Notes under the pieces: generated by a model
Told to the model about the DNA's origin: nothing
Seen by the model: only the letters and a program-made list of their open reading frames with translations
Database searches by the model: none
Shown here: in pieces, positions 852 to 62,037 of the stretch
Layout: each line of letters begins with the position of its first letter
Numbering within the stretch: position 1 is the stretch's first letter
Position numbers and translations under genes: made by a program
DNA from: Phallusia mammillata
Lineage: Eukaryota
Assembly (NCBI GenBank): GCA_965637545.1
Contig: OZ281499.1
Span: 4,464,001-4,528,000, forward strand
Direction of reading: 5' to 3'
Length of the DNA stretch: 64,000 bases

Positions 852-2080
852 ATGAGTTTGTCGTTTGAAAACGTGCTTGATTTGATGAACATAACCCTTA
901 AAGTTGGTGATCAAGATTCTGTAAGTCCAAAGAGATTTTCCGATTTTCAAGGAGCTTTTCGGGACGACCTCGAATCAAGAATTCTACACTATGCACAAAA
1001 AGGACAAACGTTTGCTTTTGATCATCTACAGTTTTACAAAATTGAGATTGGTGATTTAAAAGGCAAACAAGTTCTTCGAATGTTGATATCACTCACAAAC
1101 AACGAAGAGTTGATGAAACCTGGAAATTGTTTCGTGTTCCTTGTCAAAACCGAACCAGATACTTCACTGACTGTGCTTCATAAGTATTGTTTCCAAGCAC
1201 GAGGTGTTTCGGCTGAGTCTGGAGAAGAAAGAGGTTTGTTTGCAAGAGCATTTGATGACAAAACATGTTCCAAGCGTCAAAATAATCCCGAGTTTGTCAA
1301 CTACGATTCACAAACGCTTGAAAAATTTCGCTCCACATTATCTGAGCAATATGAAATATACATGAAAGAGAAAATTTTTAATTTGGAACCAAAATATCGT
1401 CGATTTTTTATTGGTGTTGTGTTCGAAATAGCCAAATGCCACGTGAGACATTGGAAAGTTTACAAACATTTAAAAAACTTTCCAACCTCTTCTCTAATCA
1501 AATTAGCACTTGATAATGAATGCAGTGGAAAGTTGCAGGCTGTTTTCAATGATCACAATTTGGATGAGGACATTGAAAATATTAAAAAACAGGCTGCCAA
1601 CAAAAGCTCAAGCCTAGATGAAGTTCACCAATACAAAGCAAATCTTCGTTTGAAGGGAGCTAAAACAATCATTGATCGGTGAGTAAACAGAATACCAACA
1701 GAAGTTTGTTTAAATATCTAGCTTCCATGTACTAAAAGGTAACGTCAATTAGAGTGTTTGTACATCCAGCACTACTGGCATTGTTTAAACAAAAGACTTT
1801 ATTACAAATGTATATGTGTTTACTTGTGATTATCAATTTGAAATAAGCCTTTTACTTTTCAAAAACAAACATTATACAAAAATCAATGAAATTTAGTTTG
1901 CGGTAAGTTCGCTCATGCAACAAACCGACGTAGACTTTAAAAGAAGCGAATATGCATAAACATGTTTAATTAAATTTCATTTTGTTTTGTCTCAGGATTT
2001 TTCCTCCCAATGCTAATGGAAAATATGATGGTGAAAAAGTGAAACAAGCAGCTGATGAGATAAGGAGATTTTATGAATGA
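852..2080 (+). CDS. Array copy 1, intact, tail A; exons 852-1678 + 1996-2080; 303 aa uncharacterised protein
   Basis: ORF 852-1682; donor CG|GTGAGT at 1679, acceptor CTCAG|G at 1995; splicing adds RIFPPNANGKYDGEKVKQAADEIRRFYE*. Confidence 0.9.
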
Positions 2081-2966
2081 AACATCAAATACGAACATTA
2101 TGATCGTTTTTTGTTTCTTTTTGTGTATATTGTAGAATAGAATCCTGTAGATCAGGTAATAGATGTTTACATTGCATTTAACAATGGCAGCTGAATTCTG
2201 TCTCTGTGTGTACAAATTGTAATTAATAAATTGTTCATTTTGTTACCAATGTGATGTATAAAAACATACTTTCTGTACCCAATTTAAGTTTTGCGAAATG
2301 TTTCTAATTGGTAGTGAAAACCTTTAAACGTTGATCAACAAATCATTTTCAGTATCACTAAATACAGCTATGAATATGGTGGTTGTGACCCACGACCATC
2401 AAAACAATACGGTCGCCATTTAAGACAGGACAGTTACGGTATTTGTTTGTGTGCTTAACCTCAGCACTTGTGGAGAAGGAACTCAGAAGGCAATAAATCA
2501 GGCGAATAGATTCGAAAAGTAATTGCAGTACCGAAATTCAAATGGTAGCAGAATGAGGTTGGAAACTTCCTTTTGTCAACATAAGTTGGTGATCAAGATA
2601 AAGTATACCAAACTATGTTGTGTCGATACAAATCGTTTTAATTTAACTGTTACTGCCATTATGCGTGTAGCGCAATTGGACCTGTACTGATCAAAAACAC
2701 TTGTAAGTTATATTCATAAGACCGATACAACCTTTGTTCGATTTTAACTTAAGCAACAGGGAGCACAGAGCCTACCCCTGTATGTTCAGTATTAAGAGGC
2801 AGATATTGGAAACAAGTACTTAAATAGAGTAAAAACATTAAAGTTGGTGATTACGATTTTGTAGATCTACAGAGATTTCCGGATTTTTTCAGAATGTTAT
2901 TCAAACGCCATTTTAATTCGTTCGTGTACCCGACTACAATCAATACACACCGTATCTATTTAATTT

Positions 2967-3180
2967 ATGACACAACGTTATTTGTGTTGGCCTGTGTGCT
3001 TAATCTTAGCACTTGTTGAAAGGGAACTCAATGTCATTTTGGAAAACCATCAGAATCAGTTGAATAAATTTCAAGCGTATACAAAGTACCAAAACTTGGA
3101 TACAGACAGAAACAGTCAGGTTCTCGACATAACTTTTGAAAACGTTTTGATTTGTTGATGATCAAGATTTTGTCTAAACA
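2967..3180 (+). pseudogene. Degenerate 5' relic of the family (sisters 29712-29942, 50054-50299)
   Basis: Matches conserved upstream block and runs into FENVL..(G)DQDF. Confidence 0.6.
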
Positions 3181-3795
3181 ATAGATTCTAGAATTTTCCT
3201 TTTACATTGCGAATGGATCATGGTCTTAAGTTTGCTTATATTTAAAAAAACTAAATTTTACAGCTTAAAACAGGTTCTTAAACATCCCAGCAGAAGATTT
3301 GGATCTGCAGAAATCGCAAATTATTTCAATTTGTCAGCAAACAAACCCGTTGAAGTTTAAATTAAATTACTGTTTTCTAACCAATGACCGATTAGTAGAC
3401 TTCAAAGGTTTTTTATGTAGTTTAGATATTTACCTAGTGTCACGTTGTTATAGCATAATTTGGAAACAAACGAATTAACTGAGGAAAAGGCCTCGAAGGA
3501 TAATATCGCGTGTTTTTGCACCCTGCAAAATACATAGGAGGCTGTAGCTTACGTAGTCTCTTAATTGCAATACAGGGCACTATATTTATGTTGTTCCATT
3601 ACAACGATATTGGCTATAGTGTATGTGAGTTAACGTTCAGCATAAATTGGCTCATACACTTTTATCGCACATGATTTGGATTTGGTTTATGTTTTAAGAT
3701 CGCTTTTATTCGATTACTCAAAGTTGTGGGTTGTCTGTAAAACATGATTGTTTAATTTATAACAGAAAATTACAGAAAAAAATCGAATTAACACC

Positions 3796-4894
3796 ATGAG
3801 TTTGTCGTTCGAAAACGTGCTTGATTTGTTGAACATAACCATTGAAGTTGGTGATCAAGATTCTGTAAATCCAAACAGATTTTCCGATTTTCAAGGATCT
3901 TTTCGAGACGACCTCAAATCAAGAATTCCACACTTTACAAATCAAGGAAACACATTTGCTTTTGATTATCTAGAGTTTTATAAAATTGAGACTGGTGATT
4001 TGAATGGAAAACAAGTTCTTCGAATGTTGATATCACTCACAAACAACGAAGAGTTGATGAAACCTGGAAATTGCTTCGTGTTTCTTGTCAACAACGAACC
4101 AGATATATCACTGACTGTGCTTCTCAATTATTGGATCGAAGCACGGGGTGTTTTGACTGAACTTGAACACGAAAGAGGTTTGTTTGCAAGAGCATTTTGT
4201 GACAAAACATGTTCTTGGCGCCAAAAGAACCCTGAGTTTGTCGGTTACGATTCGCAAACTCTTGAAAACATTCGCTCCACATTATCCGAACAATATGAGA
4301 CACACATGCAAACGAAGATGGTCGATTTAGAGCCAAAATATCGTCGATTGTTTTTTGGAGTTGTATTCGAAATAGCGAAGAGTCATGTGAGGCATTGGAA
4401 AGTTCACAAACATTTAAAACACTTTCCAACCGCTTCTCTTATTAAATTGGCAATTGATAATGGATGTAGTGGAAAGTTGCAGGCCGTTTTTAACGAACAT
4501 GATACCATGAAAAAATTGTTTAAAGAAATCAGTCATAAGCTTAGTGAAGAAGAAAGACTTTCTATCTACCATGCTCGTAAAGATGAACTGCGAAAAGAAG
4601 GAGCAAAGTTAATTATTGACAAGTAAGTTTGCTATGTTCTGTTGGAAAATGTCACCATTAGTGAAATGCTAAGTATGCAAATCGGGGGTGTGGCACACCT
4701 TAACTGCAAAAATGGCTTTAGAATGTACCAGTTCTTATGCTGTTTTTTCGTATACTACTAACATGAGACACATTGTTTTCGCAAACGCAAATTTCTTTTC
4801 TCATTTCAGAATTTTTCCGCCAACTGCTGAAGGAAAGTACGATAAAAGTGAAGTGACGAAAGTTGCAGATGAGATGAAATCATTTTACTTGTGA
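3796..4894 (+). CDS. Array copy 2, intact, tail B; exons 3796-4622 + 4810-4894; 303 aa
   Basis: Donor AA|GTAAGT 4623, acceptor TTTCAG|A 4809; last exon KIFPPTAEGKYDKSEVTKVADEMKSFYL*. Confidence 0.9.
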
Positions 4895-5461
4895 AAACGC
4901 CGAAAATGTCAAGATACCCGAGAACGTATATTGATCTTTTTCGATTCATTTTATTCCTAAACGTGTAAATCTGTAAATAAATAATGTATAGCTGTTGTCA
5001 GTCTATTGGCATCAAGCAAGTTACAATTGTCCAGAATTTCGACGTAAAATCTGTGTTGAGTATTAATCCTAAACTGGAAACATGTTACACAGCAATATTT
5101 AGTTGCAAAGGCAGCAGGAACAGATTTGGCAGCAGGAACAGACTAGTTTCTGCCAAGCGAAACTGAAGTTACTTGTTCGATTTTCACCTCTGTTCCAAAG
5201 GTCACAAAAGATATTATTTACAAAATGACTGGTGTTAACAATACGCCCGTTACGCAATTGATATTTGTTCGAAATCAAACGATACTGACGCTATTTGATA
5301 AGTAAATTGACAGTTGACGTGGTGGTTTGTGCACTTAACCTTAGAAACTGTGGAGAAGGAGCTCATTGTGAAATCGAGGTGTCATTACAAGCAGTTGAAT
5401 AAATTCAAACTTTAGTTCAGTACCAAAATCTGGAAACAGACAAAAAGAGTTAAGTTCGAGA

Positions 5462-6138
5462 ATGAGTTTGTCGTTTCAAAACGTGCTTGATTTGTTAAAC
5501 ATATCAATTGAAGTTGGTGATCAAGATTCTATAGATCCACAAAGATTTTCAGATTTTAAAGAAGCATTTCGAGAATATCTTCAGAAAGAGTTTTGTACTT
5601 TCGAAGCGAGGGAAGAGAGATTTCTTTTGAAAACTTACAATTTTACAATATTGAGATTGCTGATCTGAATGGAAAACAAGTTCTTCGAATGTTGATAACA
5701 CTTACAAACAACGAAGAGTTGATAAAAGATGGAAATTGCTTTGTGTTTCTTACCAACAACGAACCAGAAATTACACTGACTGTGCTTTGCAGATATTGGA
5801 TTGAGCTACGAACCGTTTTCGCTAAGTCTGATCAAGATAAGGGCAGTTGGCTAAGAGCTTTTGATGACAAAACATGTCAGGAGAAGCTGAACAACTCACT
5901 TTACATTGGGTTGGATGACAAAACTATTGAAGAGTTTCGTTTAACTTTGCCTGAGGAATATTCCAAGTACATGGAGCAAAACATGGCCGATTTGGAACCA
6001 AAATATCGTCGATTGTATTTTGGAATTGCATTCGAAATAGCAAAGTGTCACGTGAAACATTGGCTGGTTTACGAACACTTGAAGGACTTTCCCAGGTCGT
6101 CTCTCATTAAGTTAGTGATTGATAACGGATGCAAATAA
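5462..6138 (+). pseudogene. Array copy 3, frameshifted and 3'-deleted
   Basis: Frameshift near 5590 (ORFs 5462-5668 and 5593-6138); breaks at DNGC and joins C-type downstream flank (gcaaataaaacacgcc); tail and last exon absent. Confidence 0.85.
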
Positions 6139-6312
6139 AACACGCCTTTGTACAAATAAAAAACTCAGTGTAAATCTCTGCTAAAGGGAACTAGTTGGAG
6201 AAGTAAATCAGAACTTTTGGATTGAAGCAACAACAAATTGCGAGAAAGATGTAACGTTAAGGATTTAGTGTACATTGTTTGGAATACGAGACGAAATAAA
6301 TCAGAACCACAA

Positions 6313-6379
6313 GGGAATTCCCCTTTAAGGTGAGAAAGGTTCTCTTGCGTTCCGCCGTTCACGCATCGTTGTGACGTCA
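6313..6379 (+). promoter_or_regulatory. kB palindrome + CRE module
   Basis: GGGAATTCCC 6313-6322; TGACGTCA 6372-6379. Confidence 0.55.
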
Positions 6380-6470
6380 CACTTACTGGACGTACTGCTG
6401 TGTGATGAAACCAAGCAACACAAATCCATGTATGGTAGTGTGTCGGTTTGTTGTGCATCACCCTCTACAC

Positions 6471-6790
6471 CAAGGGCGGGCAACCTTTGTTACTGTTGGG
6501 GCAAATATAATAGCCAAAATTATATCGCGGACCGCACCAGTGTATAACAGAAGGTGGTTTTACTTTGTTGCTTACAAAATATGCTTAACTACAAGTAAAC
6601 TTGGAATTTGATTATTGCCACAAATTGCCTGGTCGCAGAAAAATACCATCGGGCGCTTTGTTCTGCTCAAAATATACATTATAGTTGGACTCGTATTCCA
6701 GTACATTTGAAATCCAAGCGTCTCTGCGGGCTGCACAATCTTTAATCAAGGGCCGCATTTTGCCCGCGGGCCGCAGGTTGCCCACCCCTG
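6471..6790. mobile_element. MITE, hAT-like TIRs
   Basis: Ends caagggcgggcaacc / ggttgcccacccctg; TSD not clear; absent from paralogous spacers. Confidence 0.6.
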
Positions 6791-7067
6791 CTGTTAACCC
6801 ACTCAATACCTTAAATTGCCTTTTGAAGTACCATTTGTGGAGTATTTCATTGTGAAGCGTCATTTTTTCATTTAATAGCCCAACCTGTTACCCCACTACA
6901 CACTTAAAGTAAATTACACATTAAATGTCTAAATTTAATGCGAATTGACTGGTTTTCACCCCGTATAGTATGAATATTTAGGCAGACTATCGATTACCGT
7001 GTTTCACTTCACATCGCAATACCTGGTGAATGCACGAACTTTTCATAATAAGCCGTAGTGTTTATGC

Positions 7068-7282
7068 CAGTAGTTCTCAAACTGTGCGTCGCGACGCCCT
7101 GGTGCGTCGTTTCAATTTTCCAAGGGCGTCGCAGAATAGTTCCGTTTTGCGAGTTTTTGTTGTTGTATCAATAAACACAACTTTAATAATAAGTTTCCTC
7201 ATTAAATTTTATTTGCTGGTCTGTCACAAGTCAAGAAAAACTTGTTCAGGGGCGTCGCAACAGAAAAGTTTGTGAACCACTG
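7068..7282. mobile_element. hAT-type MITE
   Basis: TIRs cagtagttctcaaact / agtttgtgaaccactg; 8-bp TSD gtttatgc / gtttgtgc; empty site gtttatgcaat at ~56151. Confidence 0.85.
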
Positions 7283-7642
7283 GTTTGTGCAATTGCAACA
7301 CATGCTAAGCCACCTTTCTAATAAATTCCTTAATCATTACAAAAGTGTGGCAATCGCGTGACATTAGTTATCTGTGCCACTAGTTTCTGCGAAGAGAAAC
7401 TAAAGTTATCACTTGTTTGATTGTCACCTGTGTTACAAAAGTCGTAAAACGGATCATTTTACGCTTGCCCCATGTTGACAATACGCCGCTACGCGATTGG
7501 TATTTGCGCGAAATTGCCGTAGCGGCTGTGGAGAAGTATCTCATTGTGTGTGTTTGGCACAAGCAGAGTCAGTTAAATAAAATCGAACTCTAAGTACAAT
7601 ACCAAAATTTAAGAAAATAGTCAAAACAGTTAAGTTTGCAGA

Positions 7643-8632
7643 ATGAGCTTGTCGTTGGAAAACGTGCTTGATTTGTTGAACATATCAATTGAAGTTGGTG
7701 ATCAAGATTCTGTAAAGCCACAAAGATTTTCAGAATTTGAAGAAACATTTCGAGAGGATCTTAGGAGAAGAATTTCCTACTTACAAAGCAATGGAAGAAC
7801 GTTTTCATTCGAAAATTTACAATTTTACAAATTTAAGATCGGTGATCTGAAAGGAAAACAAGTTCTTCGAATGTTGATATCACTCACAAACAACGAAGAG
7901 TTGATGAAAGATGGAAATTGCTTCGTGTTTCTTGTCAACAACGAACCAGATATTTCACTGATTGTGCTTTACAGATATTGGATTGAACTACGAGGTACTT
8001 TGACTGAAACGGATAAAGAAAAAGGAAATTGGTTTAAAGCTTTTGATGACAAATTATGTCAGAAAAGGCAAAATAATCCACATTTTGTTGGTTTGGATGA
8101 CGAAACTATTAAAAGAGTTTCGTTCCACTTTGCCTGAGGAATATACAAAATATATGGAGCAAAAAATGGCCAATCTGCAACCAAAATATCGTCGATTGTT
8201 TTTTGGAATTGCATTCGAAATAGCAAAGTGTCACGTAAAAAGTTGGCTGGTTTATGAACACTTAAAAGACTTTCCTAGGTCGTCTCTCATTAGGTTGGCA
8301 ATTGATAATGGATGTAGTGGAAAGTTGCAGGCAGTTTTCAACAACCATTTTTTGGATGTTTCTTGCATTCATAAAAAAACTACACATAGAAATGAACAAA
8401 TTACCAAAAATTCAACAACAGAAAGCCGAATGGCGCAGAGAAGGAGCAAAAGAGATTATTGATTGGTGAGTCAAACTTTTATAAATAGCAAAAAAGTAAC
8501 ACCATCAAGAGCCTATAGTTTGTTTAAACTAGTTTTGTTTGTCATAGGATTTTCCCACCAAATGCCGAAGGTAAATACGATGGTGAAGAAGTGAAAAAGG
8601 CTGCTGACAAGATAAAGAGATTTTATAAATAG
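7643..8632 (+). pseudogene. Array copy 4, tail C, two +1 frameshifts in A-runs; last exon 8548-8632
   Basis: Extra A at ~8111-8114 and ~8406-8410; donor TG|GTGAGT 8466 and acceptor CATAG|G 8547 intact. Confidence 0.85.
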
Positions 8633-9792
8633 TTCACGAATTTAAACCAACTGTACCGAATATTCATGGATATCACAAATTATGTCTTTACTGACAAAAT
8701 AACAACTTATCTGTTACTGACTGTATGCGGATAAAATCGACTTACCGCCATTAAAATTTTGACCATTCAAGATAAAAGCGATTAACGCAACAGTTTATTT
8801 CTACTTATAATTGATTTAACATAGAGAATTAGTTAACTTAAAGCGATATATCAAAATACGTATGACAGAATGCGTTTGCATGCGGTTGACTTTTTTTAGA
8901 CGTATTATATATATATTCCAGCTGTGAACTTTCATTCCTTGTTTTGCTGGCCGTCTGTTGGTGACTTTGTTTGTTTTATTATTTGCTCGTTTGCTGACTC
9001 AGTTTAATTGCTGGTTCTGAATTTTCTTGTGCTTGTGTGTTTTGTACGCTCGTGCGTGTGCGTAAATACACAAAAATTGCATTGTAACTACCTATCAAGG
9101 CAAATAAAACACGCCTTTGTGTAAGTTAAAAAGTCTGCGCAAATCTCTGCTGAGGGGGCCAGTTGAAAAAGAAAAGTAGAGGTTTTGGATTGAAGCAACA
9201 ATAAATTAGGACAAAGAAGTGACTCAAAAAAGGCCTCTGTAGTTTTGAACAAAGAACTACGAAAGAAAAAAAATCACGTCAGAACACTGGCTCCCATTTC
9301 AATCAAAAGAAAAAACCCTTCAACAAGAATACGATTTTTATGTGGTTGGGTTTTCACGCATCACTGTCACGTCATGCATACCAGAGTCACTGGTGTATGA
9401 CATCATGTATACCAGTGGCACTTGTAAGATTAACCTCTGTTACACAGGACCCATGCGAATTATTTTCAGCATGACTAATGATAACGATACGCAGCTATAT
9501 AAAAAGTATTTTCGCCCGTCGTTGTTTGAATTTGCATTAAAATGTTTAAACAAAGTTTCATTTTTGTCACAGGATTTTTACTCCCGCTGGAGTTAACCTT
9601 GTATTTGACATTGACTTGATGAATTGTGTCTATGTGTGTACAAATTATAATGTATAAACTGTACAATTGTAATTAATATGATATTTTATAACATATTCTC
9701 TGCACTTAATTTTAGTCGTATGTTGCGTAATATTTTAATTGGTAGTTACAACTTTTCAACGAGGCACAAGGCCCATTCGAACATAACCACAT

Positions 9793-9817
9793 GGGAATTC
9801 CCCCTTGGCGTGAGTAA
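9793..9817 (+). promoter_or_regulatory. kB palindrome + AP-1-like site ~190 bp upstream of copy 5
   Basis: GGGAATTCCC 9793-9802; TGAGTAA 9811-9817. Confidence 0.5.
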
Positions 9818-9988
9818 GGTTTTGTTGTGTATCGTCACGGAATGGTTTGTGCGGTTAACCTTAGCACACAAGCAGAAGTAAATCATTGTGAAAATCTGGA
9901 GCCACTAAAAACAGAATCAGTTGAATAAAATCGAACTCAAAATACAGCACCAAAGTTTAGAATCATACGAAAGAGTTTATCTTAGAGA

Positions 9989-10945
9989 ATGAGTTTGTCG
10001 TTTGCAAACGTGCTTGATTTGTTAAACATAACAATTGAAGTTGGTGATCAAGATTTTGTAGATCCACAACTATATTTCGAATTTCAAGGAGATTTTAGAG
10101 AATATCTTTAGGGAAGAGTTCCGTATTTTCAAAGCGAGGAAAGAGAGATTTCTTTTAAAAATTTACAATTTTATAAAATTGGCGTTGATCATCTGACCGG
10201 AAAACAAGTTCTTCGAATGTTGATATCACTTACAAACAACGAAAAGTTGATGAAAGATGGAAATTGCTTTGTGTTTCTTACCAACAACGAACCAGATATT
10301 TCACTGATTGTGCTTTACAGATATTGGATTGAAATACGAACCGTTTTGGCTAAATCGAATGAAGATAAAGGAAATTGGCCGAAAGCTTTTGATGACAAAA
10401 CATGTCAGGAGAGGCAAAATGACCCTCGTTATATTGGTTTAAACTACCAAACTATCAAAGAGTTTCGTTCCACTTTGCCTGAGGAATATACAAAATACAT
10501 GGAGCATAACATGGCTGATCTGCAACCAAAATATCGTCGATTGTTTTTTGGAATTGTATTCGAAATAGCAAAGTCTCACGTGAAAAATTGGTTGGTCTGT
10601 GAACACTTGCAAGACTTTCCTAGGTCGTCTCTCATTAAGTTGGCGATTGATAATGGATGTAGTGGAAAACTGCAGGCGGTTTTTAACCACTATTTTTGAG
10701 ATATAACTTTTATTTATGAAGAAACTACCGATAGACAGGAACAAGTTGCCAAAATCGAACAACAGAAAACCGAATGACGCAGAGAAGGAGCAAAGGAGAT
10801 TATTGATGGGTAAGTCTTTTATGTGCACCAAAATGTTGCTAACACCAATAGCCTGTTATTTCTGTAAACTCGTTTTGTCTGTCATCGAAATTTTCGGAAA
10901 ATACGATGGTGAAGAAGTGAAAAAAGCTGCTGACAAGATTCACTT
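9989..10945 (+). pseudogene. Array copy 5, tail C, three in-frame stops, damaged last exon
   Basis: ATG 9989 MSLSFANV; TAG 10109-10111, TGA 10697-10699, further TGA ~10775; donor 10810; acceptor and start of last exon corrupted. Confidence 0.85.
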
Positions 10946-51074: not shown

Positions 51075-51252
51075 CATTACAATGATATTCGCTATGTTGT
51101 ATGTGAGTGAACGTTTAGCATAACTTGGCTTAAACACTTTTATCGCAGATGATTTGCATCTAGTTTATGTTCATAAGATCGTTTTTAACCGATTGCTTGA
51201 GGTTGTTGGTTGTCTGTAAAATATTACAAACAGAAAAAAACGAATTAACACA

Positions 51253-52246
51253 ATGAGTTTGTCGTTTGAAAACGTGCTTGCCTTGTTAAACATAACACTT
51301 GAAGTTGGTGTTCAAGATTCTGTGGATCTAAAGAAGTTTTCAAATTTTCAAGGATTATTCCGAGAAGACCTCGAATCAAGAATTCCGTACTTTCAAAACG
51401 AAGGACAAATGTTTTCATTTGAAAAACTAGAATATTACAAAATTGAGATTGGTGATCGAAACGGAAAACAAGTTCTTCGAATGTTGATATCACTTACAAA
51501 CAACGAAGAGTTGATGAAAGATGGAAACTGTTTCGTGTTTCTTGTAAACAACGAACCAGATACTTCACTGACTGTGCTTCATAGGTATTGTTTCCAAGCA
51601 CGAGGTGTTTCGGCTGAATCTGGACACGAAAGAAGTTTGTTTGCAAGAGCATTTGATGACAAAACGTGTTTCAAGCGTCAAATGTACCCAAACTTTGTCG
51701 GCTACGATTCACAAACACTTGAAAAATTTCGCTCCACATTACCTGAGCAATATGAGATATACATGAAGCAGAGGATGATCGATTCGGGACCAAAATATCG
51801 TCGATTGTTTTTGGGAATTGTGTTCGAAATAGCAAAGTGTCATGTGAGGTTTTAGAAAGTTTACGAACATTTGAAACACTTTCCAACCGCTTCCCTTATC
51901 AAGTTAGCAATTGATAATGGATGTAGTGGAAAGTTGCAGACAGTTTTTAACGACCACAATTTGGATATTTCATCCATTATGAGACAACCAGGGAACAGAC
52001 AAGAACAAATTACAAACGTCCACAAAGAAAAAGCCAGATTACGTTTAGAGGGTGCAAAGATCATCATTGACATGTAAGTTAAATAATTTGAAGGGCACAA
52101 TAAGTGAAACAAATCACATTGACAGTTTAGTGTGTTAAAACTTTTCTGTTTGTAATCACAGGGTTTTTCTACCCAATGCTGAAGGAAAATATGATGGTAA
52201 AAAAGTGAGACAAGTTGCAGATGAGATAAAGAAATTTTATGAATGA
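51253..52246 (+). pseudogene. Array copy 20, tail D, nonsense TAG at 51853-51855 (Trp position); last exon 52162-52246
   Basis: ORFs 51253-51855 and 51871-52077 are in the same frame. Confidence 0.8.
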
Positions 52247-53633
52247 GATTTCAAACACTGTGTAAAAAATTTTCCTGTTTAAGATTACGCTGCACTTAAA
52301 TTCGTTTTGTATTTCCGCTTTATAGGTAATGAATAATCTTGTAATTATGTAATTTTAGAAATGTTGGTGATGAATTTGCATGTGAATGTGTGTATAAAAG
52401 ACATTTCGTTACATTTGTATTGTAGATAAATGTAATGCTTCTGTGGAAAATAAAGCATATTTTAGTTGATTAAAATGACTATATTAAGGACAAAAACAAA
52501 ACAGGCAATTCTTGAGGAATCCAAAAAGTTAAAACCGAAAACGTTGCAGCAGTTTCAGATCAAATACTTTCACAAATATTATCTCATGTCGAGAATTACT
52601 CTTAACTTCACATAAAAGGGAATTCCCCACAAGTGTAAATAAAGTTTTCATGTGGTGTGCTTGTCACGCTCTGTTATGGCGTCACACACAACAAAGTCAC
52701 TGATGTGTATCGACACCATGCGATACTTAATCAGTTTGTGTTTTAAATTCAAAACAAACTTATTTCAATAACTTAGACCGTAAGTGTGTTTTCCATAATG
52801 TTTTCGGGTAAGTAATTAGCTTTATAGAATAGATCAGTGCTACTCAAACTGTGGAACACGTACCGGCAGAAATTAGTCCATGTTTTTCCGTCATAAGAGT
52901 TTACCATCCCACGCTGAAGAAAAAAATACAAATGGTGAAAATATTTTCCTTCATAAAAGTTTACCATCCCACGCTGAGGAAAAATACAATGGTGAAAGAA
53001 TTTGCCTGGTATTTAGGAGTTTAAAATGCCTTTCCTTCACTTTTATCTTCCAAGTTATGTATTTTGAAATGTTTCAGGGCACAAGCTAAATGTGTTTTGG
53101 GGTACACAAAAATATTAAAGCAAATGTAGATCAACGTATTCGATTTAAACATCAGCTACTGCATCTCTATTTAAATTTAATTACACGCTTATGTACAACA
53201 TCATACCTCTCATATTTGTCATGACGTCGCACTATACACATGGTTCCGTCTTTTTCCGCATCGTATTTGTGGAAATGTCAAGCATTAAAAATGAGTGACA
53301 ATTTACAGCTGAAAAATTGTTGATTGGAAAAGTTTAGTGTTGCAAATATGATAATAATGCACGGTTAGGTTCCTACGAATAGCGAGATATGATCGAAATT
53401 TGCAACGCGGTTTCCGTTTGAAAGGAAATTGGTGGGCATAGCATGCAAATGTTACACCACACATAAACAGTTCGTTTTTACTATTAGATCTTGAAAAAAA
53501 CGGTAAATAGTCTTTCAGTCGGTAAAAGTAGGGTATTTGCAACGATATAACACGAACTACTTAGAACCACTTTTAAACTTTTTTACGGGCAGGAGTATAC
53601 ACACTTACAGTTACCGCAATATCAGCATAAATA

Positions 53634-53785
53634 TTGGTGATCAAGATTCTGTAGGTTAACCAGGTTTAATAGATTGTCACGAGACATTTCAAGACGATCC
53701 AGAGAAAATTTGCACATTTTCAAATCAAAGAAGAAGGTTTTTTGCAATTGTCCAATATTACTAAATTAAGATCGGTACTCTTAAC
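53634..53785 (+). pseudogene. Highly decayed 5' exon fragment
   Basis: ggtgatcaagattctgtag...gagacatttcaagacgat...caatattactaaattaagatcggt aligns by eye to roughly codons 18-70 of the family. Confidence 0.55.
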
Positions 53786-54047
53786 AAAAATAGCTTTTAC
53801 CAGCTTAAGTAAGCTGAAATCTGTCAGCAATACAAACACACTGTTTTGTAAAGTAGTTGGCTTTTCAATCCAACCCAGGATTGTCGCGTTTTGGGACATT
53901 GATTAACCTACCAAATGTAACTTGAAGTTTATAGTCAAAATAGTTCATTATTTGACAGCCTTAAATCACACCAAACGTTTAAGTTTAGGGTAAGTGAAAT
54001 CCAAAATTTGTAGACATTACCTAATCAAACCACACTGACACGTAAAA

Positions 54048-55352
54048 ATGAGTTTATCATTTGAAGAAGTCCTTGACCTGCTAAGCATCACTGTTGAAGT
54101 AGACGACAACGATTTTCCGAAAATTCAGGAGATGCCCAACTTTGAGGGACAATTTAGGCAGTTTCTGGAAGGAAAACTACAGCACTACCTAAAAAAAGGA
54201 AAAGTGACACAACTTTTCAATTTTGAATATTACAAAATTGAAATTGGCGAGTTAAACGGAAAACAAATTCTTCGAATGTTGATATCACTAACAAACAACG
54301 AGGAGTTGATGAAAGACGGAAATTGTTTCGTGTGCTGTGTAAACGATGTCGGAGAAAATTCAGTTATTGTATTCTCAAAATATTGCATTGAATCAAGAGG
54401 TGCCGTTGCAGAGAACGAAGAAGAGCGAGGAAACTGGTCTAAGGCATTTGATGAAAAAGCATGCATCCTACAACGCAGAAATCCAAGATATCTTGGTTTA
54501 GACAAACAAACAATCAAACAGTTTTGTTCAACTTTATCAAAGCAATACAACAGCTTTTTGTCAACAAAAATGGCGGATTTGCAACCACAATATCGTCGGT
54601 TGTTTTTCGGAGTTGTGTTCGAAATTGCAAAGTGCTATATCAGACATTGGGATGCTTACAAACATTTAAAAACCTTTCCAACTGCTTCTCTTATCAAGTT
54701 GGCAATTGATAATGGATGTAGTGGAAAGTTGCAGGCTGTTTTTAACGAACATGATATCATGAAAGATTTGTTTAAAGAAATCAGCAAACAGCTTAGTGAA
54801 GAAGAAAGACTTTCTGTCTACCATGCTCGTAAAGATGAACTACGAAAAGAAGGAGCAAAGTTAATTATTGACAAGTAAGTTTGTTACCTTCTGTTGCAAA
54901 AAGTCACAATTAGTAAAATGCTAACTCTGCAAATCGGCTGTAACAGCATAAAGGTAACTGACACACACGTTAGGTTAAAAAATGACGTTAGAATGTAGCA
55001 TTTTTTACATGAGACATATTGAGATTAGAGGCCCAATCATTTGTTATCGCGCGGTGTTTTCGTTGCGTTGTGACGTGCTTGCGGTTCCTTCCTTTTCCCT
55101 TTTTTTATCGTGCACTGTACTAGTCGCATTCAGTGTTATTTACCCTGATGAATACGACCTGTATAGGACGTCGAAACGTCGGAATAAAATTACATTTGCC
55201 AGAAGAGCTCTACAAACTTGATGAGACATATTGTTTTCGCAAACGAACATTTCCTTTCTCGTTTCAGAATTTTCCCACCAACTGCTGAAGGAAAGTACGA
55301 TAAAAGTAAAGTAACAAAAGTTGCTGATGAGATGAAATCATTTTACTTGTGA
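54048..55352 (+). CDS. Array copy 21, intact, most divergent head, tail B; exons 54048-54874 + 55268-55352; 303 aa
   Basis: Donor 54875, acceptor TTTCAG 55267; intron carries the hammerhead-bearing insertion. Confidence 0.88.
55022..55220 (+). mobile_element. 199-bp Penelope-like / retrozyme-like non-autonomous insertion with 13-bp TSD
   Basis: Flanked by atgagacatattg at 55009-55021 and 55221-55233; empty site present once in paralogous B introns (e.g. ~4765-4777); contains hammerhead core. Confidence 0.8.
55136..55187 (+). ncRNA. Minimal type I hammerhead ribozyme motif
   Basis: CTGATGA 55145-55151, stem II acg-a-cct/gtat/agg-a-cgt, GAAA 55173-55176, ACGT palindrome with GUC site ending 55180, stem I ttatt(ta)cc / ggaataa. 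Confidence 0.75.
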
Positions 55353-55720
55353 AAACAAGATGCCCAAGAACGTATATTGATGTTTTTCGATTAATTCTGT
55401 TCCTAAATGTGTAAATCTGTAAATAAATAATGTATAGCAATTGTCAGTCTATTGGGGGAAGCAAGTTACAATTGTCCGGAATTTCGACGTAACATCTGTG
55501 CTGAGTATTAATCCTAACCCGAGAACATGTTACGCAATGTTTACTTGCATAGGCAGCAAAACCAAACGATTTTCCCCTCCAAAGGTTTTATTGCATCAAA
55601 AATGATATAGTCTTAAAGATGGTATGCAACCATGCGAGAAAGTAGTTGAAACAATTCATAAACTTCATGCATTTAGCGTACATTGTGTGGAATACGAGAC
55701 GAAATAAATCAGAGCCGCAA

Positions 55721-55787
55721 GGGAATTCCCCCTTAATGTGAGAAAGGTTTCTTTGTGTTTCTTTGTTCAAGCATCGATGTGACGTCA
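55721..55787 (+). promoter_or_regulatory. kB + CRE module (sisters 57896-57962, 62424-62490)
   Basis: GGGAATTCCC 55721-55730; TGACGTCA 55780-55787. Confidence 0.55.
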
Positions 55788-56375
55788 CACTTACAGGACG
55801 CACTACCGTATGGCGAAACCAAGCGACACAAAACCAATGCATGGTTTTGATTGATGTTGGGTTGTGTGTCGAATGTTGTGCATTACCTACCACCTACACA
55901 CCCACCCTTTACCCCCCAGGCTATCTAAATTTTAAAGGAATCGTACAATTTATAGACTAAGCCACTACAAAGCGTCACTTACTGAGTTTCATCTTGTAGC
56001 CCTACCTGTTTACCCGCTAACATTCTAAAGTAGAATAAGCATTTAATAATGTATGATTTTATTGAGATTTGCACCCCTTATAGCTTGTTTATTTAAGCAG
56101 AATATTAATTCTGCTAAATAGCCGTGTTTCACTTTATAATAAGCCATACAGTTTATGCAATAGCAGCATATGCTAAGCCACCTTTCTATTTTTTGAAACC
56201 ATTACGCAAGTGTGGTGATCGTGTTACAAAGATGCTACCTGTACCACCAGTTTCTGTCAAGCGAAACTGAAGTTACTTTTATAATTGTCTTTTATGATTA
56301 AAAGCAGTTGAATAAATTCTACCTTTAAGTACAGTACCAAAATTTGAAAACAGGCAAAAAGAGTTAAGTTCGAGA

Positions 56376-57492
56376 ATGAGTTTGTCGTTTCAAAACGTGC
56401 TTGATTTGTTAAACATAACAATTGAAGTTTGTGATCAAGATTCTATAGATCAACAAAGATTTTCAGATTTTAACGGAGCATTTCGAGAATATCTTAAGGA
56501 AAAAGTTTTGTACTTTCAAAACGAGGGAAGAAAGATTTCTTTTGAAAATTTACAATATTACAAAATTGAGATTGCTGATCTGAATGGAAAACAAGTTCTT
56601 CGAATGTTGATATCACTTTTAAACAACAAAGAGTTGATAAAAGATGAAAATTGCTTCGTGTTTCTTACCAACAACGAACCAGATACTGCAATGACTGTGC
56701 TTTGCAGATATTGGATTGAGCTACGAGGCACTTTGACTGAAACGGATAAAGAAAAAGGAAATTGGTTTAAAGCTTTTGATGACAAATTATGTCAGAAAAG
56801 GCAAAATAACCCACGTTATATTGGCTTGGATGACAAAACTATTAAAAAGCTTCGTTCCACTTTGCCAGAGGAATATATAAAATACATGGAGCAAAACATG
56901 GCCGATCTGCAACCGAAATATCGTCGATTGTTTTTTGGAATTGTATTCGAAATAGCAAAGTGTCACGTGAAAAATTGGCTGGTCTACGAACACTTAAAGG
57001 ACTTTCCTAGGTCGTCTCTAATTAAATTAGCGATTGATAATGGATGTAGTGGAAAGTTGCAGGCCGTGTTTAACGACCATGATATCATAAAAGGTTTGTT
57101 TAAAGAAATCAGTCAACAGCTTAGTGAAAAAGAAAGACTTTCTGTCTACCATGCTCGTAAAGATGAACTACGAAAACAAGGAGCAAAGTTAATTATTGAC
57201 AAGTAAGTTTGCTACCTTCTGTTGGAAAATGTCACCATTAGTAAAATGCTAGCAATGCAAATCGGGTGCAACGGCATAAAGGTAACTGGCGCACACGTTA
57301 AGTGCAAAAATGGCTTTAAAACGTACCTTTTTTTCATTGTTTTTTTAATATATTACCAACGTGAGACATATAGTTTTCGCCAAAGCAAATTCCCTTTCTC
57401 GTTTCAGAATTTTCCCACCAACTGCTGAAGGAAAGTACGATAAAAGTGAAATAACGAAAGTTGCTGATCAGATGAGATCATTTTACTTGTAA
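56376..57492 (+). CDS. Array copy 22, intact, tail B; exons 56376-57202 + 57408-57492; 303 aa
   Basis: Donor 57203, acceptor 57407. Confidence 0.9.
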
Positions 57493-58522
57493 AAACTTTT
57501 GCAGAAAATGTCAAGAAGCCCGAGAACGTATATTGATCTTGTACGATTCATTTTGTTCTTAAATGAGGAAATCTGTAAATAATAAATGTATAGCAATTGT
57601 CAGTCTATTGGCGTCAAGCAAGTTACAATTGTCCAGAATTTCGACATAAAATCTGTGTTGAGTATTAATCCTAAACCGAAGAGATGTTACACAATATTTA
57701 GTTACAAAAACAGCAAAACCAAATTTGATGAACGTTAGCTTACGATTTTACCCTTTAATGATTTTATGGCATCAAAAAACATATAGTCCTAAAATGATAT
57801 GCAACCATGTGAGAAAGTAATTCAAACAATGTATAAACGGTGAGCATTTCGCGTACATCGTGTTGAGTACGAGACGAAACGAACCAGAACAGCAAGGGAA
57901 TTCCCCCTTAACGTGAGAAAGGTTTTCTTGCGTTTTGTCGTTCACGCTTGGATGTGACGTCACACTTACCGGACGCACTGCTGTGTGGCGACACCAAGCG
58001 ACACAAACGTTTTTCACCCCGTACAGTATGAATATTTAAGCAGAATATACATCACCGTATTTCACTTTACATCACAATATCTTCAGTGAATGTACAATTT
58101 GTTTCACGATAGTCCGCTGTGTATGTACAATAGCAATTTATGCTAAGCCACATTGCTAGTTATTTTGGAAATCATTGTGGCGATCGCATGGCATAAGTTT
58201 AAATCTACCTGTGCCATTAGTTTCTGCCAAGAGAAACTGAAGTTACTTGTTTGATTTTCACCTCTGTTCCAAAGGTCATTTACAAAATGACTGGTGTTAA
58301 CAATACGCCGTTACGCAATTGATATTTGTTCGAAATCAAAACGTGCAAACGATATTTGATACGTGAAAAGTAAGTTACGGTGTTGGTTTGTGTGCTCAAC
58401 CTTAGAAACTGTGGAGAAGGAACACATTGTGAAAGTGAGGTGTCATTCCAAGCAATTGAAAAAATTCAAACTTTATTACAGTACCAAAATCTGGAAACAG
58501 ACAAAAAGAGTTAAGTTCGAGA

Positions 58523-59511
58523 ATGAGTTTGTCGTTTCAAAACGTGCTTGATTTGTTAAACATAACAATTGAAGTTTGTGATCAAGATTTTATAGACCCA
58601 CAAAGATTTTCAGATTTTAAAGGAGCATTTCGAGAATATCTTCAGGGAAGAGTTTTATACTTTCGAAGCGAGGGAAGAGAGATTTCTTTTGAAAAATTAC
58701 AATTTTACAAACTTGAGATTGGTGATCTTAATGGAAAACAAGTTCTTCGAAGGTTGATAACACTTACAAACAACGAAGAGTTGATAAAAGATGGAAATTG
58801 ATTTGTGTTTCTTACCAACAACGAACCAGAAATTGCCCTGACTGTGCTTTGCAGATATTGGATTGAGCTACGAACCGTTTTGGCTAAGTCCGATCCAGAT
58901 AAGGGCAGTTGGCCAAGAGCTTTTGATGACAAAACATGCCAGGAGAAGCTGAACGACTTACGTTATATTGGGTTGGATGACAAAACTATTAAAGAGTTTC
59001 GTTCAACTTTGCCTGAGGAATATTCAAAATACATGGAGCAAAACATGGCCGATTTGCAACCAAAATATCGTCGATTGTTTTTTGGAATTGCATTCGAAAT
59101 AGCAAAGTGTCACGTGAAACATTGGCTGGTTTACGAACACTTGAAGGACTTTCCCAGGTCGTCTCTCATTAAGTTAGCGATTGATAACGGATGCAGTGGA
59201 AAGTTGCAGGCGGTGTTTAACCACCATTTTTTACATGTTTCTTTTATTCGTAAAACAACTACCGATAGACAGGAACAAATTACTAAAATTCAACAACAGA
59301 AAGCCGAATGGCGCAGAGAAGGAGCAAAAGAGATTATTGTTTGGTAAGTCAATCTTTTATACACAGCAAAATAGAAAATTAACCCCAATAGTTGATTATT
59401 TCTGTAACTAGTTTTGTCTGCCATAGGATTTTTCCACCCAATGCTGAAGGAAAATACGATGGTGAAGAAGTAAAAAAGGCTGCTGACAAGATAAAGAGAT
59501 TTTACGAATAG
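58523..59511 (+). pseudogene. Array copy 23, tail C, nonsense TGC>TGA at 58799-58801; last exon 59427-59511
   Basis: ORFs 58523-58801 and 58805-59347 in the same frame; splice sites intact. Confidence 0.8.
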
Positions 59512-60203
59512 ACCACGAGTTTAAACCAATATGAGTTGAACTGTAGCGAAAAGACATGAGCATCGTGTATGTAACTAGCGAAAAAAACAACACTTAAACA
59601 CAAAATTAAAAACACAAATTTTTAGATATTCAAGGCCAAAGCGATTTACCATCAAAATGTGTGTGACAGAATCCGTTTGTGCGTTTGATCTTTGCAATGA
59701 CCCGTGTATTTCAGCTGTAAACTTTCACTCCTCTTTCCAGCCTTTCTTCGTTTGCTGACCATTAGTTCGCCACTTTGTTTATTTCATTTTTTGCCCTCTT
59801 TGTTGAATAAGTTTAATTACTGGTTCTAATTAGTCTTGTAGTTGTGTGTATGTACGTCCGTACGTGTGAGAAAATAAACAGAACTTGCATTGTAAATAGG
59901 CTTGTCGTTCAGGGCAAATAAAACACGCCTTTGTATAAATAAAACGTCAGTGTAAATCTCTGCTAAAGGGAACCAGTTGGAAAAGGAAAGTAGAACTTTT
60001 TGATTGAAGCAACAATAAATTACGACAAACATGTAAAGAACGAAAAAAACTTCGCGTCAGAACACTGGCTTCCATTTTAACCAAAGGAAAAACAAACCTT
60101 CAGTAAGAGTAAGATTTTTATGTGGTTGGGTTGTCACGCACGATTGTGACGTCATGCACACCAGTGTGACTGGTGTATGACGTCATGTATAACATATTTT
60201 CAG

Positions 60204-60643
60204 TAGTGATGGGACGAAACCAGGTTTTGAAGCGCGTACCGATACCGAGTACGAATACCACATGTATATACCTTCGATACCGAGTACTTAAGTACAGTGT
60301 TGTACTTAGTTGTATATCACTGGCTAGTTTATCTGCCATGACCGGGGTACAGGCATGTACACACACATGCAGAAAAATGTAATTTCCATAATTCTCCATC
60401 CATACGATTGCAAAAGAAAGTCGGTAACCTGGCGGAACTTTTCCCGATTTTGTGTTGTCCGAGGCAAATATTGGCATAAAGTTGCCCGTATTCTTATGAT
60501 GTAAATCGGCCTTAGGTACTCACACGTTGGTATCAAAAACTGAAACAAAATATTTCGATACCGAGTACGAGTATCGATACCACTAAAATCGTTCGATACC
60601 GTCGATACCGAGTACCGAGTACCGGGTACCCGTCCCATCACTA
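60204..60643. mobile_element. Second copy of the same MITE at the homologous site
   Basis: TIRs tagtgatgggacg / cgtcccatcacta; same right flank gttacaag, left TSD deleted; copied with the segment. Confidence 0.85.
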
Positions 60644-60923
60644 GTTACAAGGGTCACAAATGCGATCATTTTCAGCATGACTGATGTTAACAGTGCGCAG
60701 CTGTATGCTTGGCATTTGTCCCTGACGATAACAAAAAACGACGTTGACGCTACGTGATGCGTGACGCGACAGTTTCGGTGTTGTTTTGTGCGCTTGAACC
60801 TTGGCACCTCTGGATATGGAACTCATTATAAATGTGAGGTATCATAAAAAATCACTTAAATAAATTCGAACTTTAAAGACAGTACAAACATTTGGAAACG
60901 GAGAAGAGAGTTAAGATTGCAGA

Positions 60924-62037
60924 ATGAGTTTGTCGTTTGAAAACGTGCTTGATTTATTAAACATAACCATTAAAGTTGGTGATCAAGATTCTGTCAGTCC
61001 ACAAAGATTTTCAGATTTTAAAGGAACATTTCGAGACCATCTTGAAAGAAGAATGTCGTACTTTCAAAGTCAGGGACGTACGTTTTCATTTGAAAACTTA
61101 CAATATTACAAAATTGGGATTGGTGATTTGAATGGAAAACAACTTTTTCGAATGTTGATATCACTCACAAACAACGAAGAGTTGATGAAACCTGGAAACT
61201 GCTTCGTGTTTCTTGTCAACAACGAACCAGATACTTCACTGACTGTGTTTCACAGTTATTGGTTTGAACCACGAGCTACTTCTGGATCGGATAATGATAG
61301 AGGAAATTGGACTCGAGCCTTTGATGACAAAACACGACAGGAGAGGCAGAAATATCCTTTTTCCTTTGGATATGACAACCAGGCCATCAAAGAGTTTCGC
61401 TCCACATTATCTGAGCAATATGTGAATTATATGAAGCAAAAAATTGCCAATATAAAACCAAAATATCGCCGGTTGTTTTTCGGAGTTGTGTTTGAAATTG
61501 CAAAGTGTCATGTGAGGTATTGGGAAGTTTACAAACATTTGAAAAACTTTCCAACGGCTTCCCTTATCAAATTGGCAATTGATAATGGATGTAGTGGAAA
61601 GTTGCAGGCCGTGTTTAACGACCATGATATCATAAAAGGTTTGTTTAAAGAAATCAGTCAACAGCTTAGTGAAAAAGAAAGACTTTCTGTCTACCATGCT
61701 CGTAAAGATGAACTACGAAAACAAGGAGCAAAGTTAATTATTGACAAGTAAGTTTGCTACCTTCTGTTGGAAAATGTCACCATTAGTAAAATGCTAGCAA
61801 TGCAAATCGGGTGCAACGGCATAAAGGTAACTGGCGCACACGTTAAGTGCAAAAATGGCTTTAAAACGTACCTTTTTTTCATTGTTTTTTTTATATATTA
61901 CCAACGTGAGACATATAGTTTTCGCAAAAGCAAATTCCCTTTCTCATTTCAGAATTTTCCCACCAACTGCTGAAGGAAAGTACGATAAAAGTGAAGTAAG
62001 GAAAGTTGCTGATCAGATGAGATCATTTTACGTGTAA
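60924..62037 (+). CDS. Array copy 24, intact, tail B; exons 60924-61747 + 61953-62037; 302 aa
   Basis: Donor 61748, acceptor 61952. Confidence 0.9.

What the first reader, a model, noticed from the sequence alone, without database searches (positions are those of the whole stretch)
1510..61640. Combinatorial head/tail mosaics switching at the DNGCSGKLQAVFN motif
Seen: five C-terminal cassettes, each linked to its own intron and last exon. A = DEDIENIKKQAANKSSS (copies 1, 9, 12, 14, 19). B = DIMKDLFKEIS..SEEERL (2, 7, 13, 21, 22, 24). C = HFLD/HV..ETTDRQEQ (4, 5, 10, 15, 23, 25). D = DISSIMRQTRDREEQ (6, 17, 18, 20). D' = DISS.SSQTSSKE (8, 11, 16). The same head occurs with different tails: the MSSxF head with B (7), A (9) and D (17); the SGEERGLFARAF head with A, B, D and D'; the GNWFKAFDDKLCQKRQN head with C (4) and B (22). 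The switch falls at the near-invariant gataatggatgtagtggaaagttgcag stretch. Inference: recombination inside the conserved core shuffles modules and generates a combinatorial repertoire.
Basis: partly seen in the sequence, partly recalled or inferred. Interest (0 to 1): 0.85.

Follow-up and report, generated by a model that had tools for sequence, protein, structure and literature searches.

The report
Mosaic tandem gene array in sea squirt
A sea-squirt chromosome carries more than 50 tandem copies of an unstudied 303-residue protein gene whose front parts and four or five very different C-terminal cassettes have been reshuffled by recombination between copies, which is real but is the usual way such arrays evolve.

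Summary
The window holds 25 same-strand copies of a two-exon gene. They belong to an array of at least 54 copies over about 170 kb.

Head and tail trees conflict strongly in both directions (AU p 6e-5 to 8e-48). The class signal jumps at nt 690-720 of exon 1, just after DNGCSGKLQAVFN.

- Mapped junctions lie anywhere in nt 610-720, not at one site.
- The head is itself a mosaic: its two halves reject each other's trees, and significant breakpoints occur throughout.
- A third junction cluster separates the tail from the last exon.
- D and D' share one intron type.
- About half of the window's copies are broken.

Homology shared by all copies runs from -150 to +700 of each unit and then collapses to within-class homology. 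The "switch" is therefore the 3' edge of shared homology.

Best reading: a birth-and-death array reshuffled in the germ line by gene conversion and unequal crossing-over. The old tail cassettes are too diverged to recombine internally.

The protein family is restricted to tunicates among named hits. It has no Pfam or fold match, and its function is unknown. A useful "repertoire" is untested.

The parts
1..64000 (+). Part of a tandem array of at least 54 same-strand copies. The array spans about G000:C6:4.402-4.574 Mb. The unit is about 2.1-3.3 kb.
852..2080 (+). Copy 1 (c20), tail A. Exon 1 852-1678, last exon 1996-2080. Intact, 303 aa.
3796..4894 (+). Copy 2 (c21), tail B. Exon 1 3796-4622, last exon 4810-4894. 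Intact, 303 aa. Used for the structure model.
5462..6138 (+). Copy 3. A head fragment ending at IDNGCK, with no tail. Broken.
7643..8632 (+). Copy 4 (c22), tail C. Frameshifted.
9989..10809 (+). Copy 5 (c23), tail C. Stop codon in the tail; no last exon of its own found within 1 kb.
12018..13006 (+). Copy 6 (c24), tail D. Stop codon at the exon junction, giving 273 aa.
15364..16481 (+). Copy 7 (c25), MSSSF head with tail B. Intact, 304 aa.
17802..18774 (+). Copy 8 (c26), tail D'. The frame reads through where the splice donor should be; I infer the donor was deleted.
20371..21461 (+). Copy 9 (c27), MSSAF head with tail A. Broken.
22781..23608 (+). Copy 10 (c28), tail C. Broken.
24761..25757 (+). 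Copy 11 (c29), tail D' with an A-type 3' flank. Intact, 304 aa.
27592..28816 (+). Copy 12 (c30), tail A. Intact, 303 aa.
30277..31393 (+). Copy 13 (c31), tail B. Intact, 303 aa.
32438..33606 (+). Copy 14 (c32), tail A. Intact, 304 aa.
34387..35376 (+). Copy 15 (c33), tail C. Broken.
37279..38275 (+). Copy 16 (c34), tail D'. Broken.
39914..41132 (+). Copy 17 (c35), MSSSF head with tail D. Intact, 302 aa. The intron is enlarged to 310 nt by an insertion.
45126..46112 (+). Copy 18 (c36), tail D and D-type intron, but an A-like last exon and a 3' flank unlike the usual D type. 299 aa.
47926..49155 (+). Copy 19 (c37), tail A. Frameshift in the tail.
51253..52246 (+). Copy 20 (c38), tail D. Broken.
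54048..55352 (+). Copy 21 (c39), tail B. Its head belongs to a divergent clade that carries only B tails. Intact, 303 aa. The intron holds a repeat insertion.
56376..57492 (+). Copy 22 (c40), intact, 303 aa. The clearest recent chimera. From -450 to +650 it is about 96% like C-class copy c13. From +650 onward it is about 99% like copy 24.
57026..58206 (+). Shared tract of copy 22, about 99% identical to window 61574-62734 of copy 24. It covers the tail, intron, last exon and about 700 nt of 3' flank. Both ends are mapped.
58523..59511 (+). Copy 23 (c41), tail C. Broken.
60924..62037 (+). Copy 24 (c42), tail B. Intact, 302 aa.
62870..63397 (+). Copy 25 (c43), tail C. Truncated at the 5' end.
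4405..4515 (+). Example of the switch zone (nt 610-720 of exon 1, copy 2). It encodes FPTASLIKLAIDNGCSGKLQAVFN plus the first tail codons. Homology shared by all copies ends at about nt 700.

Best explanation
This is a lineage-specific array that evolves by duplication and decay (birth and death). It encodes an uncharacterised, apparently cytosolic ascidian protein. Its copies have been repeatedly reshuffled in the germ line by homologous recombination between non-allelic copies. Most events look like short-tract gene conversion (about 0.1-1.2 kb). Unequal crossing-over has also duplicated multi-gene blocks.

All copies share homology only from about 150 nt upstream of the ATG to nt ~700 of exon 1. 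Downstream of that point lie four old sequence lineages: A, B, C and D, with D' a sub-variant of D. Each lineage comprises the tail, the intron and the 3' flank. The lineages are saturated at synonymous sites and cannot pair with each other, so each moves as one block.

A junction that replaces a tail must therefore lie in the head. On the other side it must lie in the conserved last exon or in a downstream island of homology. Short tracts put the head junction next to the edge of homology, in nt 610-720.

Shown: the incongruence, the breakpoint landscape, the homology landscape, and one tract with both ends mapped.

Inferred: conversion rather than crossover as the main process, and that the clustering is an edge-of-homology effect.
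For: - Reciprocal AU rejections between head and tail.
- Tail classes need 15 changes on the head tree; the minimum is 4.
- The class signal per site is flat at 0.22-0.32 over the head, 0.35-0.41 at nt 480-660, then 0.52 at nt 690-719 and 0.77 or more after nt 720.
- The one-breakpoint scan plateaus at nt 549-698, with a gain of about 1530 lnL.
- The head is also mosaic.
- Universal homology runs from -150 to +700 and is class-only beyond that point.
- Tail synonymous difference is 0.16 within a class and 0.67 between classes. In the head it is 0.44 and 0.48. Tails therefore coalesce more recently than the heads they sit on.
- Tail class is tied to intron type and mostly to the 3' flank for 400-600 nt.
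- The tail of gene i is not linked to the head of gene i+1 (r = -0.08). It is linked to its own head (r = 0.31, p = 5e-4). This argues against simple single-junction crossovers.
- Copy 22 carries a 1.18-kb tract with both ends defined.
- Junctions also gather modestly at another conserved stretch: about six of the 56 switches lie at nt 197-288, around the most conserved window at nt 211-240.
- Nine junctions fall between the tail and the last exon.
Against: - The peak at the motif is measured where the right-hand flank is unusually informative, so part of the 2-fold local excess may reflect detection power.
- I ran no simulation of uniform breakpoints on this homology landscape.
- Painted switches are not independent events.
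- Conversion and double crossover cannot be told apart from one haplotype.
- Selection against chimeras inside the head could also shape the pattern.
- The assembly of the array was not checked against reads across junctions.
Confidence: 0.75

Rival explanations
1. The 27-nt motif is a dedicated recombination hot spot or signal. It has been kept because it shuffles head and tail modules into an adaptive combinatorial repertoire.
For: The strongest boundary of the gene lies here. Deep-clade exchange is 3-4 times higher than inside the head. Fourteen of 30 possible combinations of head clade and tail class are seen. The motif is the second most conserved 27-nt window of exon 1.
Against: Junction intervals scatter over nt 610-720, and several lie upstream of the motif. 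The motif is a conserved peptide in distant paralogues and in Ciona and Clavelina, where I found no such large array. Synonymous divergence over codons 220-234 is ordinary (pS 0.41). A more conserved stretch at nt 211-240 is only a weak junction cluster. Many copies are pseudogenes. No expression was seen for three copies in four RNA-type runs.
Confidence: 0.1
2. Recombination junctions arise evenly along the homologous head. Chimeras joined inside the folded head are mostly lost by selection, so survivors are enriched for junctions in the linker before the C-terminal helix.
For: The tail starts in the least confident stretch of the C-terminal half of the model (residues 231-240, pLDDT about 56), between the head and a long helix at 251-275. 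Deep head clades stay largely coherent across nt 1-600.
Against: Many well-supported switches inside the head exist in copies with intact frames. Broken copies, which are free of selection, were not analysed separately. This is compatible with the best explanation rather than exclusive of it.
Confidence: 0.25
3. There is no recombination. Tails simply evolve fast or converge, and the classes reflect rate differences.
For: The tail has the highest pN/pS of the protein, about 0.8.
Against: Non-coding introns and 3' flanks follow the tail class. Within a class, tail synonymous difference (0.16) is far below that of the attached heads (0.44). AU tests reject congruence in both directions.
Confidence: 0.01
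4. The chimeric copies are assembly artefacts of a repetitive array.
For: The array consists of units 75-99% alike. Two DNA runs hold only about half of the sampled words.
Against: Chimeras differ from their closest donors by 1-10% on both sides, whereas a mis-join would be identical. The same head-tail combinations recur in diverged duplicates. There are no N runs in the 194 kb examined.
Confidence: 0.03

Closest known systems
Mosaic tandem multigene families shaped by gene conversion and unequal crossing-over between copies (for example primate KIR, MHC, plant NLR clusters; from my own knowledge, not tested here)
   Same: Same-strand tandem paralogues. Strong incongruence between gene segments. 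Hybrid genes that join the front of one lineage to the back of another. Many pseudogenes. Block duplications.
   Different: The protein family is unrelated and of unknown function. The 3' cassettes are unusually discrete: saturated synonymous divergence, class-specific introns and an abrupt end of homology within about 30 nt.
Staphylococcus aureus tandem paralogue cluster, in which the evolving unit spans the 3' part of one ORF, the spacer and the 5' part of the next ORF (PMC2568036; abstract only, seen)
   Same: A tandem paralogue array in which parts of a gene, rather than the whole ORF, have separate histories.
   Different: Here the tail of gene i shows no linkage with the head of gene i+1 (r = -0.08). 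The evolving units are a head block (about -450 to +650) and a tail block (about +650 to +1800), bounded on both sides.
Cassette-type antigenic variation and chicken immunoglobulin pseudogene conversion (from my own knowledge)
   Same: Diverged cassettes flanked by conserved sequence are copied whole. Pseudogene copies could serve as donors.
   Different: No single expression site exists: every unit is a complete gene. The events are old germ-line events, with donor and recipient 90-99% alike. There is no evidence of programmed or somatic change.
Ciona intestinalis LOC100175694 (XP_002129972.3) and Clavelina lepadiformis CAK8672537.1 / CAK8672149.1, uncharacterised proteins
   Same: Same family by profile (E 1e-35 to 4e-26). 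Same length of about 300 aa. Same motif position. In Clavelina, the same intron position before a homologous C-terminal peptide.
   Different: Within ±10 kb the Clavelina gene has one paralogous neighbour, not a 50-copy array. Nothing is known about their function either.

Membership tests
Ascidian LOC100175694-like uncharacterised protein family | Full-length profile similarity to the Ciona and Clavelina proteins | tested here: met
   The profile of 19 paralogues hits P0006 (Ciona) at 1.2e-35 over positions 1-273. It hits P0011 and P0013 (Clavelina) at 4e-27 and 4e-26.
Ascidian LOC100175694-like uncharacterised protein family | Two coding exons, with the intron directly after the ...AK.II.. 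helix, and a short conserved C-terminal exon | tested here: met
   Here the donor is AA|gtaagt and the last exon encodes IFPPNAEGKYDG...FYE. The annotated Clavelina gene splits at ...AAKEIILQ|gtaagt with an intron of about 135 nt.
Mosaic multigene family formed by recombination between non-allelic copies | Statistically supported incongruence between gene segments | tested here: met
   AU tests. Breakpoint scans.
Mosaic multigene family formed by recombination between non-allelic copies | Identifiable donor-like and recipient copies with mapped tract ends | tested here: met
   Copy 22 is c13-like up to +650 and copy-24-like from +650 to +1830. Thirteen of 23 tail-sharing pairs have 5' tract ends at nt 631-695.
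Mosaic multigene family formed by recombination between non-allelic copies | Conversion rather than reciprocal crossover as the process | tested here: inconclusive
   The absence of linkage between tail i and head i+1 and the tract with two ends favour conversion. One haplotype cannot exclude double crossovers.
Tandem cluster with an evolving unit that spans two adjacent genes (S. aureus type, PMC2568036) | The 3' part of gene i co-evolves with the 5' part of gene i+1 | tested here: not met
   Mantel r = -0.08 (p = 0.98) over 39 adjacent pairs.
Variable-exon / constant-exon clusters (protocadherin, UGT1 type) | Many variable exons share one set of downstream constant exons | tested here: not met
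   A last exon lies 60-620 nt downstream of the tail in nearly all copies with a mapped donor; in two (copies 5 and 10) none was found within 1 kb.
Programmed cassette diversification (expression site with silent donors; VLR-like assembly) | One incomplete or unique acceptor gene plus partial donor cassettes | tested here: not met
   Units are complete genes, each with an ATG, tail, intron and last exon. Eleven of the 25 window copies have a fully intact spliced frame.
Programmed cassette diversification (expression site with silent donors; VLR-like assembly) | Somatic or ongoing rearrangement | not testable with these tools
   This needs tissue-resolved long reads.

The most novel reading that the evidence does not exclude
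The array encodes a real combinatorial repertoire of intracellular recognition proteins. Variable head loops (codons 43-57 and 116-130) and interchangeable C-terminal helix cassettes would be separate specificity modules. Selection would keep four or five old tail types and favour reshuffling at the linker, for example for ascidian innate immunity or self/non-self discrimination.
Probability: 0.1. Interest if true: 0.7.

Novelty: new member of a known kind. Interest (0 to 1): 0.4.

Why it matters
The array is a very clean natural example of how the landscape of shared homology dictates where paralogues can exchange parts. One 850-nt block is shared by all copies, and it is followed by cassettes that can only move whole.

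It also flags a large, unstudied expansion of a gene family found, among named hits, only in tunicates. The family has no recognisable fold or domain. If the tails and variable head loops turn out to be binding surfaces, the array would be a candidate diversified recognition family in a chordate invertebrate.

As it stands, the mechanism is ordinary and the function is unknown.

Tried and rejected
- **Function.** I found no lead. Pfam gave nothing on three window copies and ten homologues. PDB sequence search gave nothing. The word-indexed protein search gave nothing. Foldseek against the PDB had no hit with E at or below 0.001. VIA-align wide gave a best Z of 4.9, on helices only. The ESM Atlas gave TM 0.35 or less by shape and 0.78 or less by features.
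- **Expression.** Four RNA-type runs laid on window 51001-57000 covered only repeats, not copies 20-22. Three other RNA-type runs hold 19-23% of the words of window 27400-33500.
- **Megablast tract catalogue.** A catalogue of high-identity tracts failed. HSPs ran on into the 80%-identical heads and were removed by the identity filter.
- **Threshold tract lengths.** These were noisy because intron indels break the windows.
- **First painting.** It over-called switches and mishandled missing last exons. I replaced it with a stricter model plus Fisher tests.
- **Papers.** No paper mentions the Ciona locus name.
- **Earlier scan notes.** None describes this array.


Full report
**What is there**

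The window is G000:C6:4464001-4528000 of a 240-Mb genome in 312 contigs. GC content is about 35%. Earlier notes of this scan call the genome a sea squirt, one naming Phallusia mammillata. I did not verify the species. The only named homologues I found are from the ascidians Ciona and Clavelina.

The 27-nt motif occurs 23 times on the + strand at 3 or fewer mismatches, against 0 expected. I fetched the flanks. The array then has 54 motif-bearing copies over about 170 kb, all on one strand, and there are no N runs in the 194 kb examined.

Each unit is a two-exon gene.
- Exon 1 has about 275 codons and ends ...IID(K/R/W), with a split codon before gtaagt or gtgagt.
- The intron is short.
- The 85-nt last exon encodes IFPPNAEGKYDG...FYE.

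An annotated Clavelina homologue has its intron at the same place. The Ciona and Clavelina proteins carry a homologous C-terminal peptide.

Of the 25 copies in the window:
- 11 have a fully intact spliced frame of 302-304 aa;
- one ends one residue early;
- one stops at the exon junction;
- the others are frameshifted, carry stop codons, have lost the donor or are truncated, including all six C-class copies.

**Check of the observation**

Intron type follows tail class, apart from a few outliers outside the window, in the 52 copies examined. D and D' share one intron type, and D' lies inside D in the tail tree.

The last exon is distinctive only for B. Elsewhere it is similar between classes and sometimes exchanged, together with the 3' flank:
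- c03 (outside the window) has a D tail with a C-type last exon and flank;
- copy 18 has a D tail with an A-like last exon;
- copy 11 has a D' tail with an A-type flank.

**Is it recombination?**

On the head tree, the tail classes need 15 changes. The minimum is 4 and shuffled labels need 28. I then used 44 copies with near-identical duplicates removed.
- Head nt 1-600 rejects monophyly of each class: AU p is 8e-48 for A, 2e-7 for B, 6e-5 for C, 5e-6 for D and 2e-13 for D'.
- In the tree of tail plus last exon, A, B and C are clades with 100% support.
- The same tail data reject the MSSxF, SGEERG and c40+c09+c13 head clades, with p from 6e-5 to 2e-45.

Rate differences or convergence cannot explain this.
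- Non-coding introns and 400-600 nt of 3' flank follow the tail class.
- Synonymous difference in tails is 0.16 within a class and 0.67 between classes, which is near saturation.
- In heads the same figures are 0.44 and 0.48.

Tail blocks are therefore younger than the heads they are attached to, and the classes themselves are very old.

**Where are the junctions?**

- *Class signal per site.* It is flat at 0.22-0.32 over the head and 0.35-0.41 at nt 480-660. It is 0.52 at nt 690-719 and 0.77 or more after nt 720.
- *One-breakpoint likelihood scan.* It has a plateau at nt 549-698 (gain about 1530 lnL, dAIC about -2870) and drops steeply beyond nt 698.
- *Second breakpoint.* Placed anywhere in nt 200-550, it adds about 440-457 lnL (dAIC about -700) with no preferred site.
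- *Head halves.* Trees of nt 1-300 and nt 300-600 reject each other (dlnL 340 and 499; AU 0.0017 and 8.5e-5).
- *Local test with ±150 columns and column-shuffle nulls.* It shows excess incongruence at every boundary in the head (96-196 lnL, z of 7 or more). The peak is 327-344 lnL at nt 638-698, and the value inside the tail is 59.
- *Copying-model painting with Fisher tests.* It gave 56 significant switches: about 15 at nt 610-720, about 30 spread over nt 70-575, and 9 at the junction between tail and last exon.
- *Deep clades.* The normalised exchange index is 0.39-0.57 across the motif boundary and 0-0.25 across boundaries inside the head.

So the motif zone is the main boundary, but it is not the only one. 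It is a zone of about 100 nt, not a site.

**Why there?**

Homology shared by all of the roughly 54 copies runs from about -150 to +700 of each unit. It then falls abruptly to 5-20 copies, that is, to members of the same class. A partial island of shared homology sits at the last exon. The boundary is therefore the 3' edge of shared homology.

The motif itself is a conserved peptide. It is present in distant paralogue clusters of this genome (C6 at 1.48-1.55 Mb and C1 at 9.44-9.48 Mb) and in Ciona and Clavelina. Codons 220-234 have ordinary synonymous divergence (pS 0.41). The 27-nt core is the second most conserved window of exon 1 (mean pairwise difference 0.108). The most conserved window is nt 211-240 (0.05), and it shows only a modest local rise in incongruence.

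The tail of gene i is not linked to the head of gene i+1 (r = -0.08). It keeps a weak link with its own head (r = 0.31, p = 5e-4). Simple single-junction unequal crossovers, which would give the S. aureus type of unit described in the abstract of PMC2568036, are therefore not the main process.

The clearest recent event is copy 22. From -450 to +650 it is about 96% like c13 (class C). From +650 to about +1830 it is about 99% like copy 24 (class B). After that, similarity is lost.

**Most likely mechanism**

Shown: the segments have different histories; the head is mosaic; the cassettes are old and move whole; and junctions concentrate next to the heterologous sequence.

Inferred: most events are short-tract gene conversions or gap repairs that use the nearest homology on each side of a non-pairing cassette. 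Unequal crossing-over adds block duplications, for example c44-c45 and c51-c52, which share 5.5 kb at more than 96% identity.

Selection against chimeras joined inside the folded head may add to the pattern. In the AlphaFold model (pLDDT 74.6, pTM 0.72), the tail starts in a low-confidence linker at residues 231-240, before a long helix at 251-275.

**The protein**

I found no Pfam family, solved relative or fold match. By eye, the N-terminus does not look like a signal peptide. A profile search of 1.84 billion proteins found 49 relatives. The named ones are ascidian 'uncharacterised' proteins. The Clavelina locus has one paralogous neighbour within ±10 kb, not an array.

pN/pS is highest at codons 43-57 (0.79), 116-130 (0.69) and 235-261 (about 0.8). 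It is lowest at codons 1-15 and 190-234.

Expression is not established. See the expression entry under Tried and rejected.

**Verdict**

This is a new, very clean member of a known kind of evolving gene array, in a protein family of unknown function.

Noticed in passing
The surrounding gene is not covered. It behaves like an abundant, transcribed dispersed repeat.
   Followed up: partly
window 36821-36884, 11680-11735, 24440-24497 (also 2833-2887, 14328-14411, 49920-49974, 53634-53732): Solo fragments of the first 60-100 nt of exon 1, some with about 20 nt of leader, lie 320-1330 nt upstream of the next full copy. Three break off after GGTGATCAAG (nt ~64). Nt ~75-85 is also a recurrent switch point in the painting. 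They are probably scars of truncated copies.
   Followed up: partly
exon 1 nt 211-240 of every copy (for example window 4006-4035): The stretch that encodes LRMLISLTNN is the most conserved of the gene, even at third codon positions (mean pairwise difference 0.07, against 0.34 for the head). This suggests nucleotide-level homogenisation or constraint that I did not explain.
   Followed up: no
G000:C6:1476001-1550000 and G000:C1:9440001-9480000 (L014-L021): Two further clusters of the same family, 25-45% identical to the window copies. The C6 cluster seems to be two inverted near-duplicate blocks. Their tails after the VFG motif are also the most variable part.
   Followed up: partly
array copies c05, c07, c12, c19, c39, c45, c48, c49, c52 (in the window: copy 21, 54048-55352): A divergent head clade (branch length 0.31, support 100/100) carries only B tails. 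It seems not to exchange tails with the rest of the array.
   Followed up: no
window 40740-41047 (intron of copy 17) and L005 (intron of c10): Class D and D' introns are enlarged by unrelated insertions of about 226 nt and about 530 nt. These are likely transposable-element fragments.
   Followed up: no
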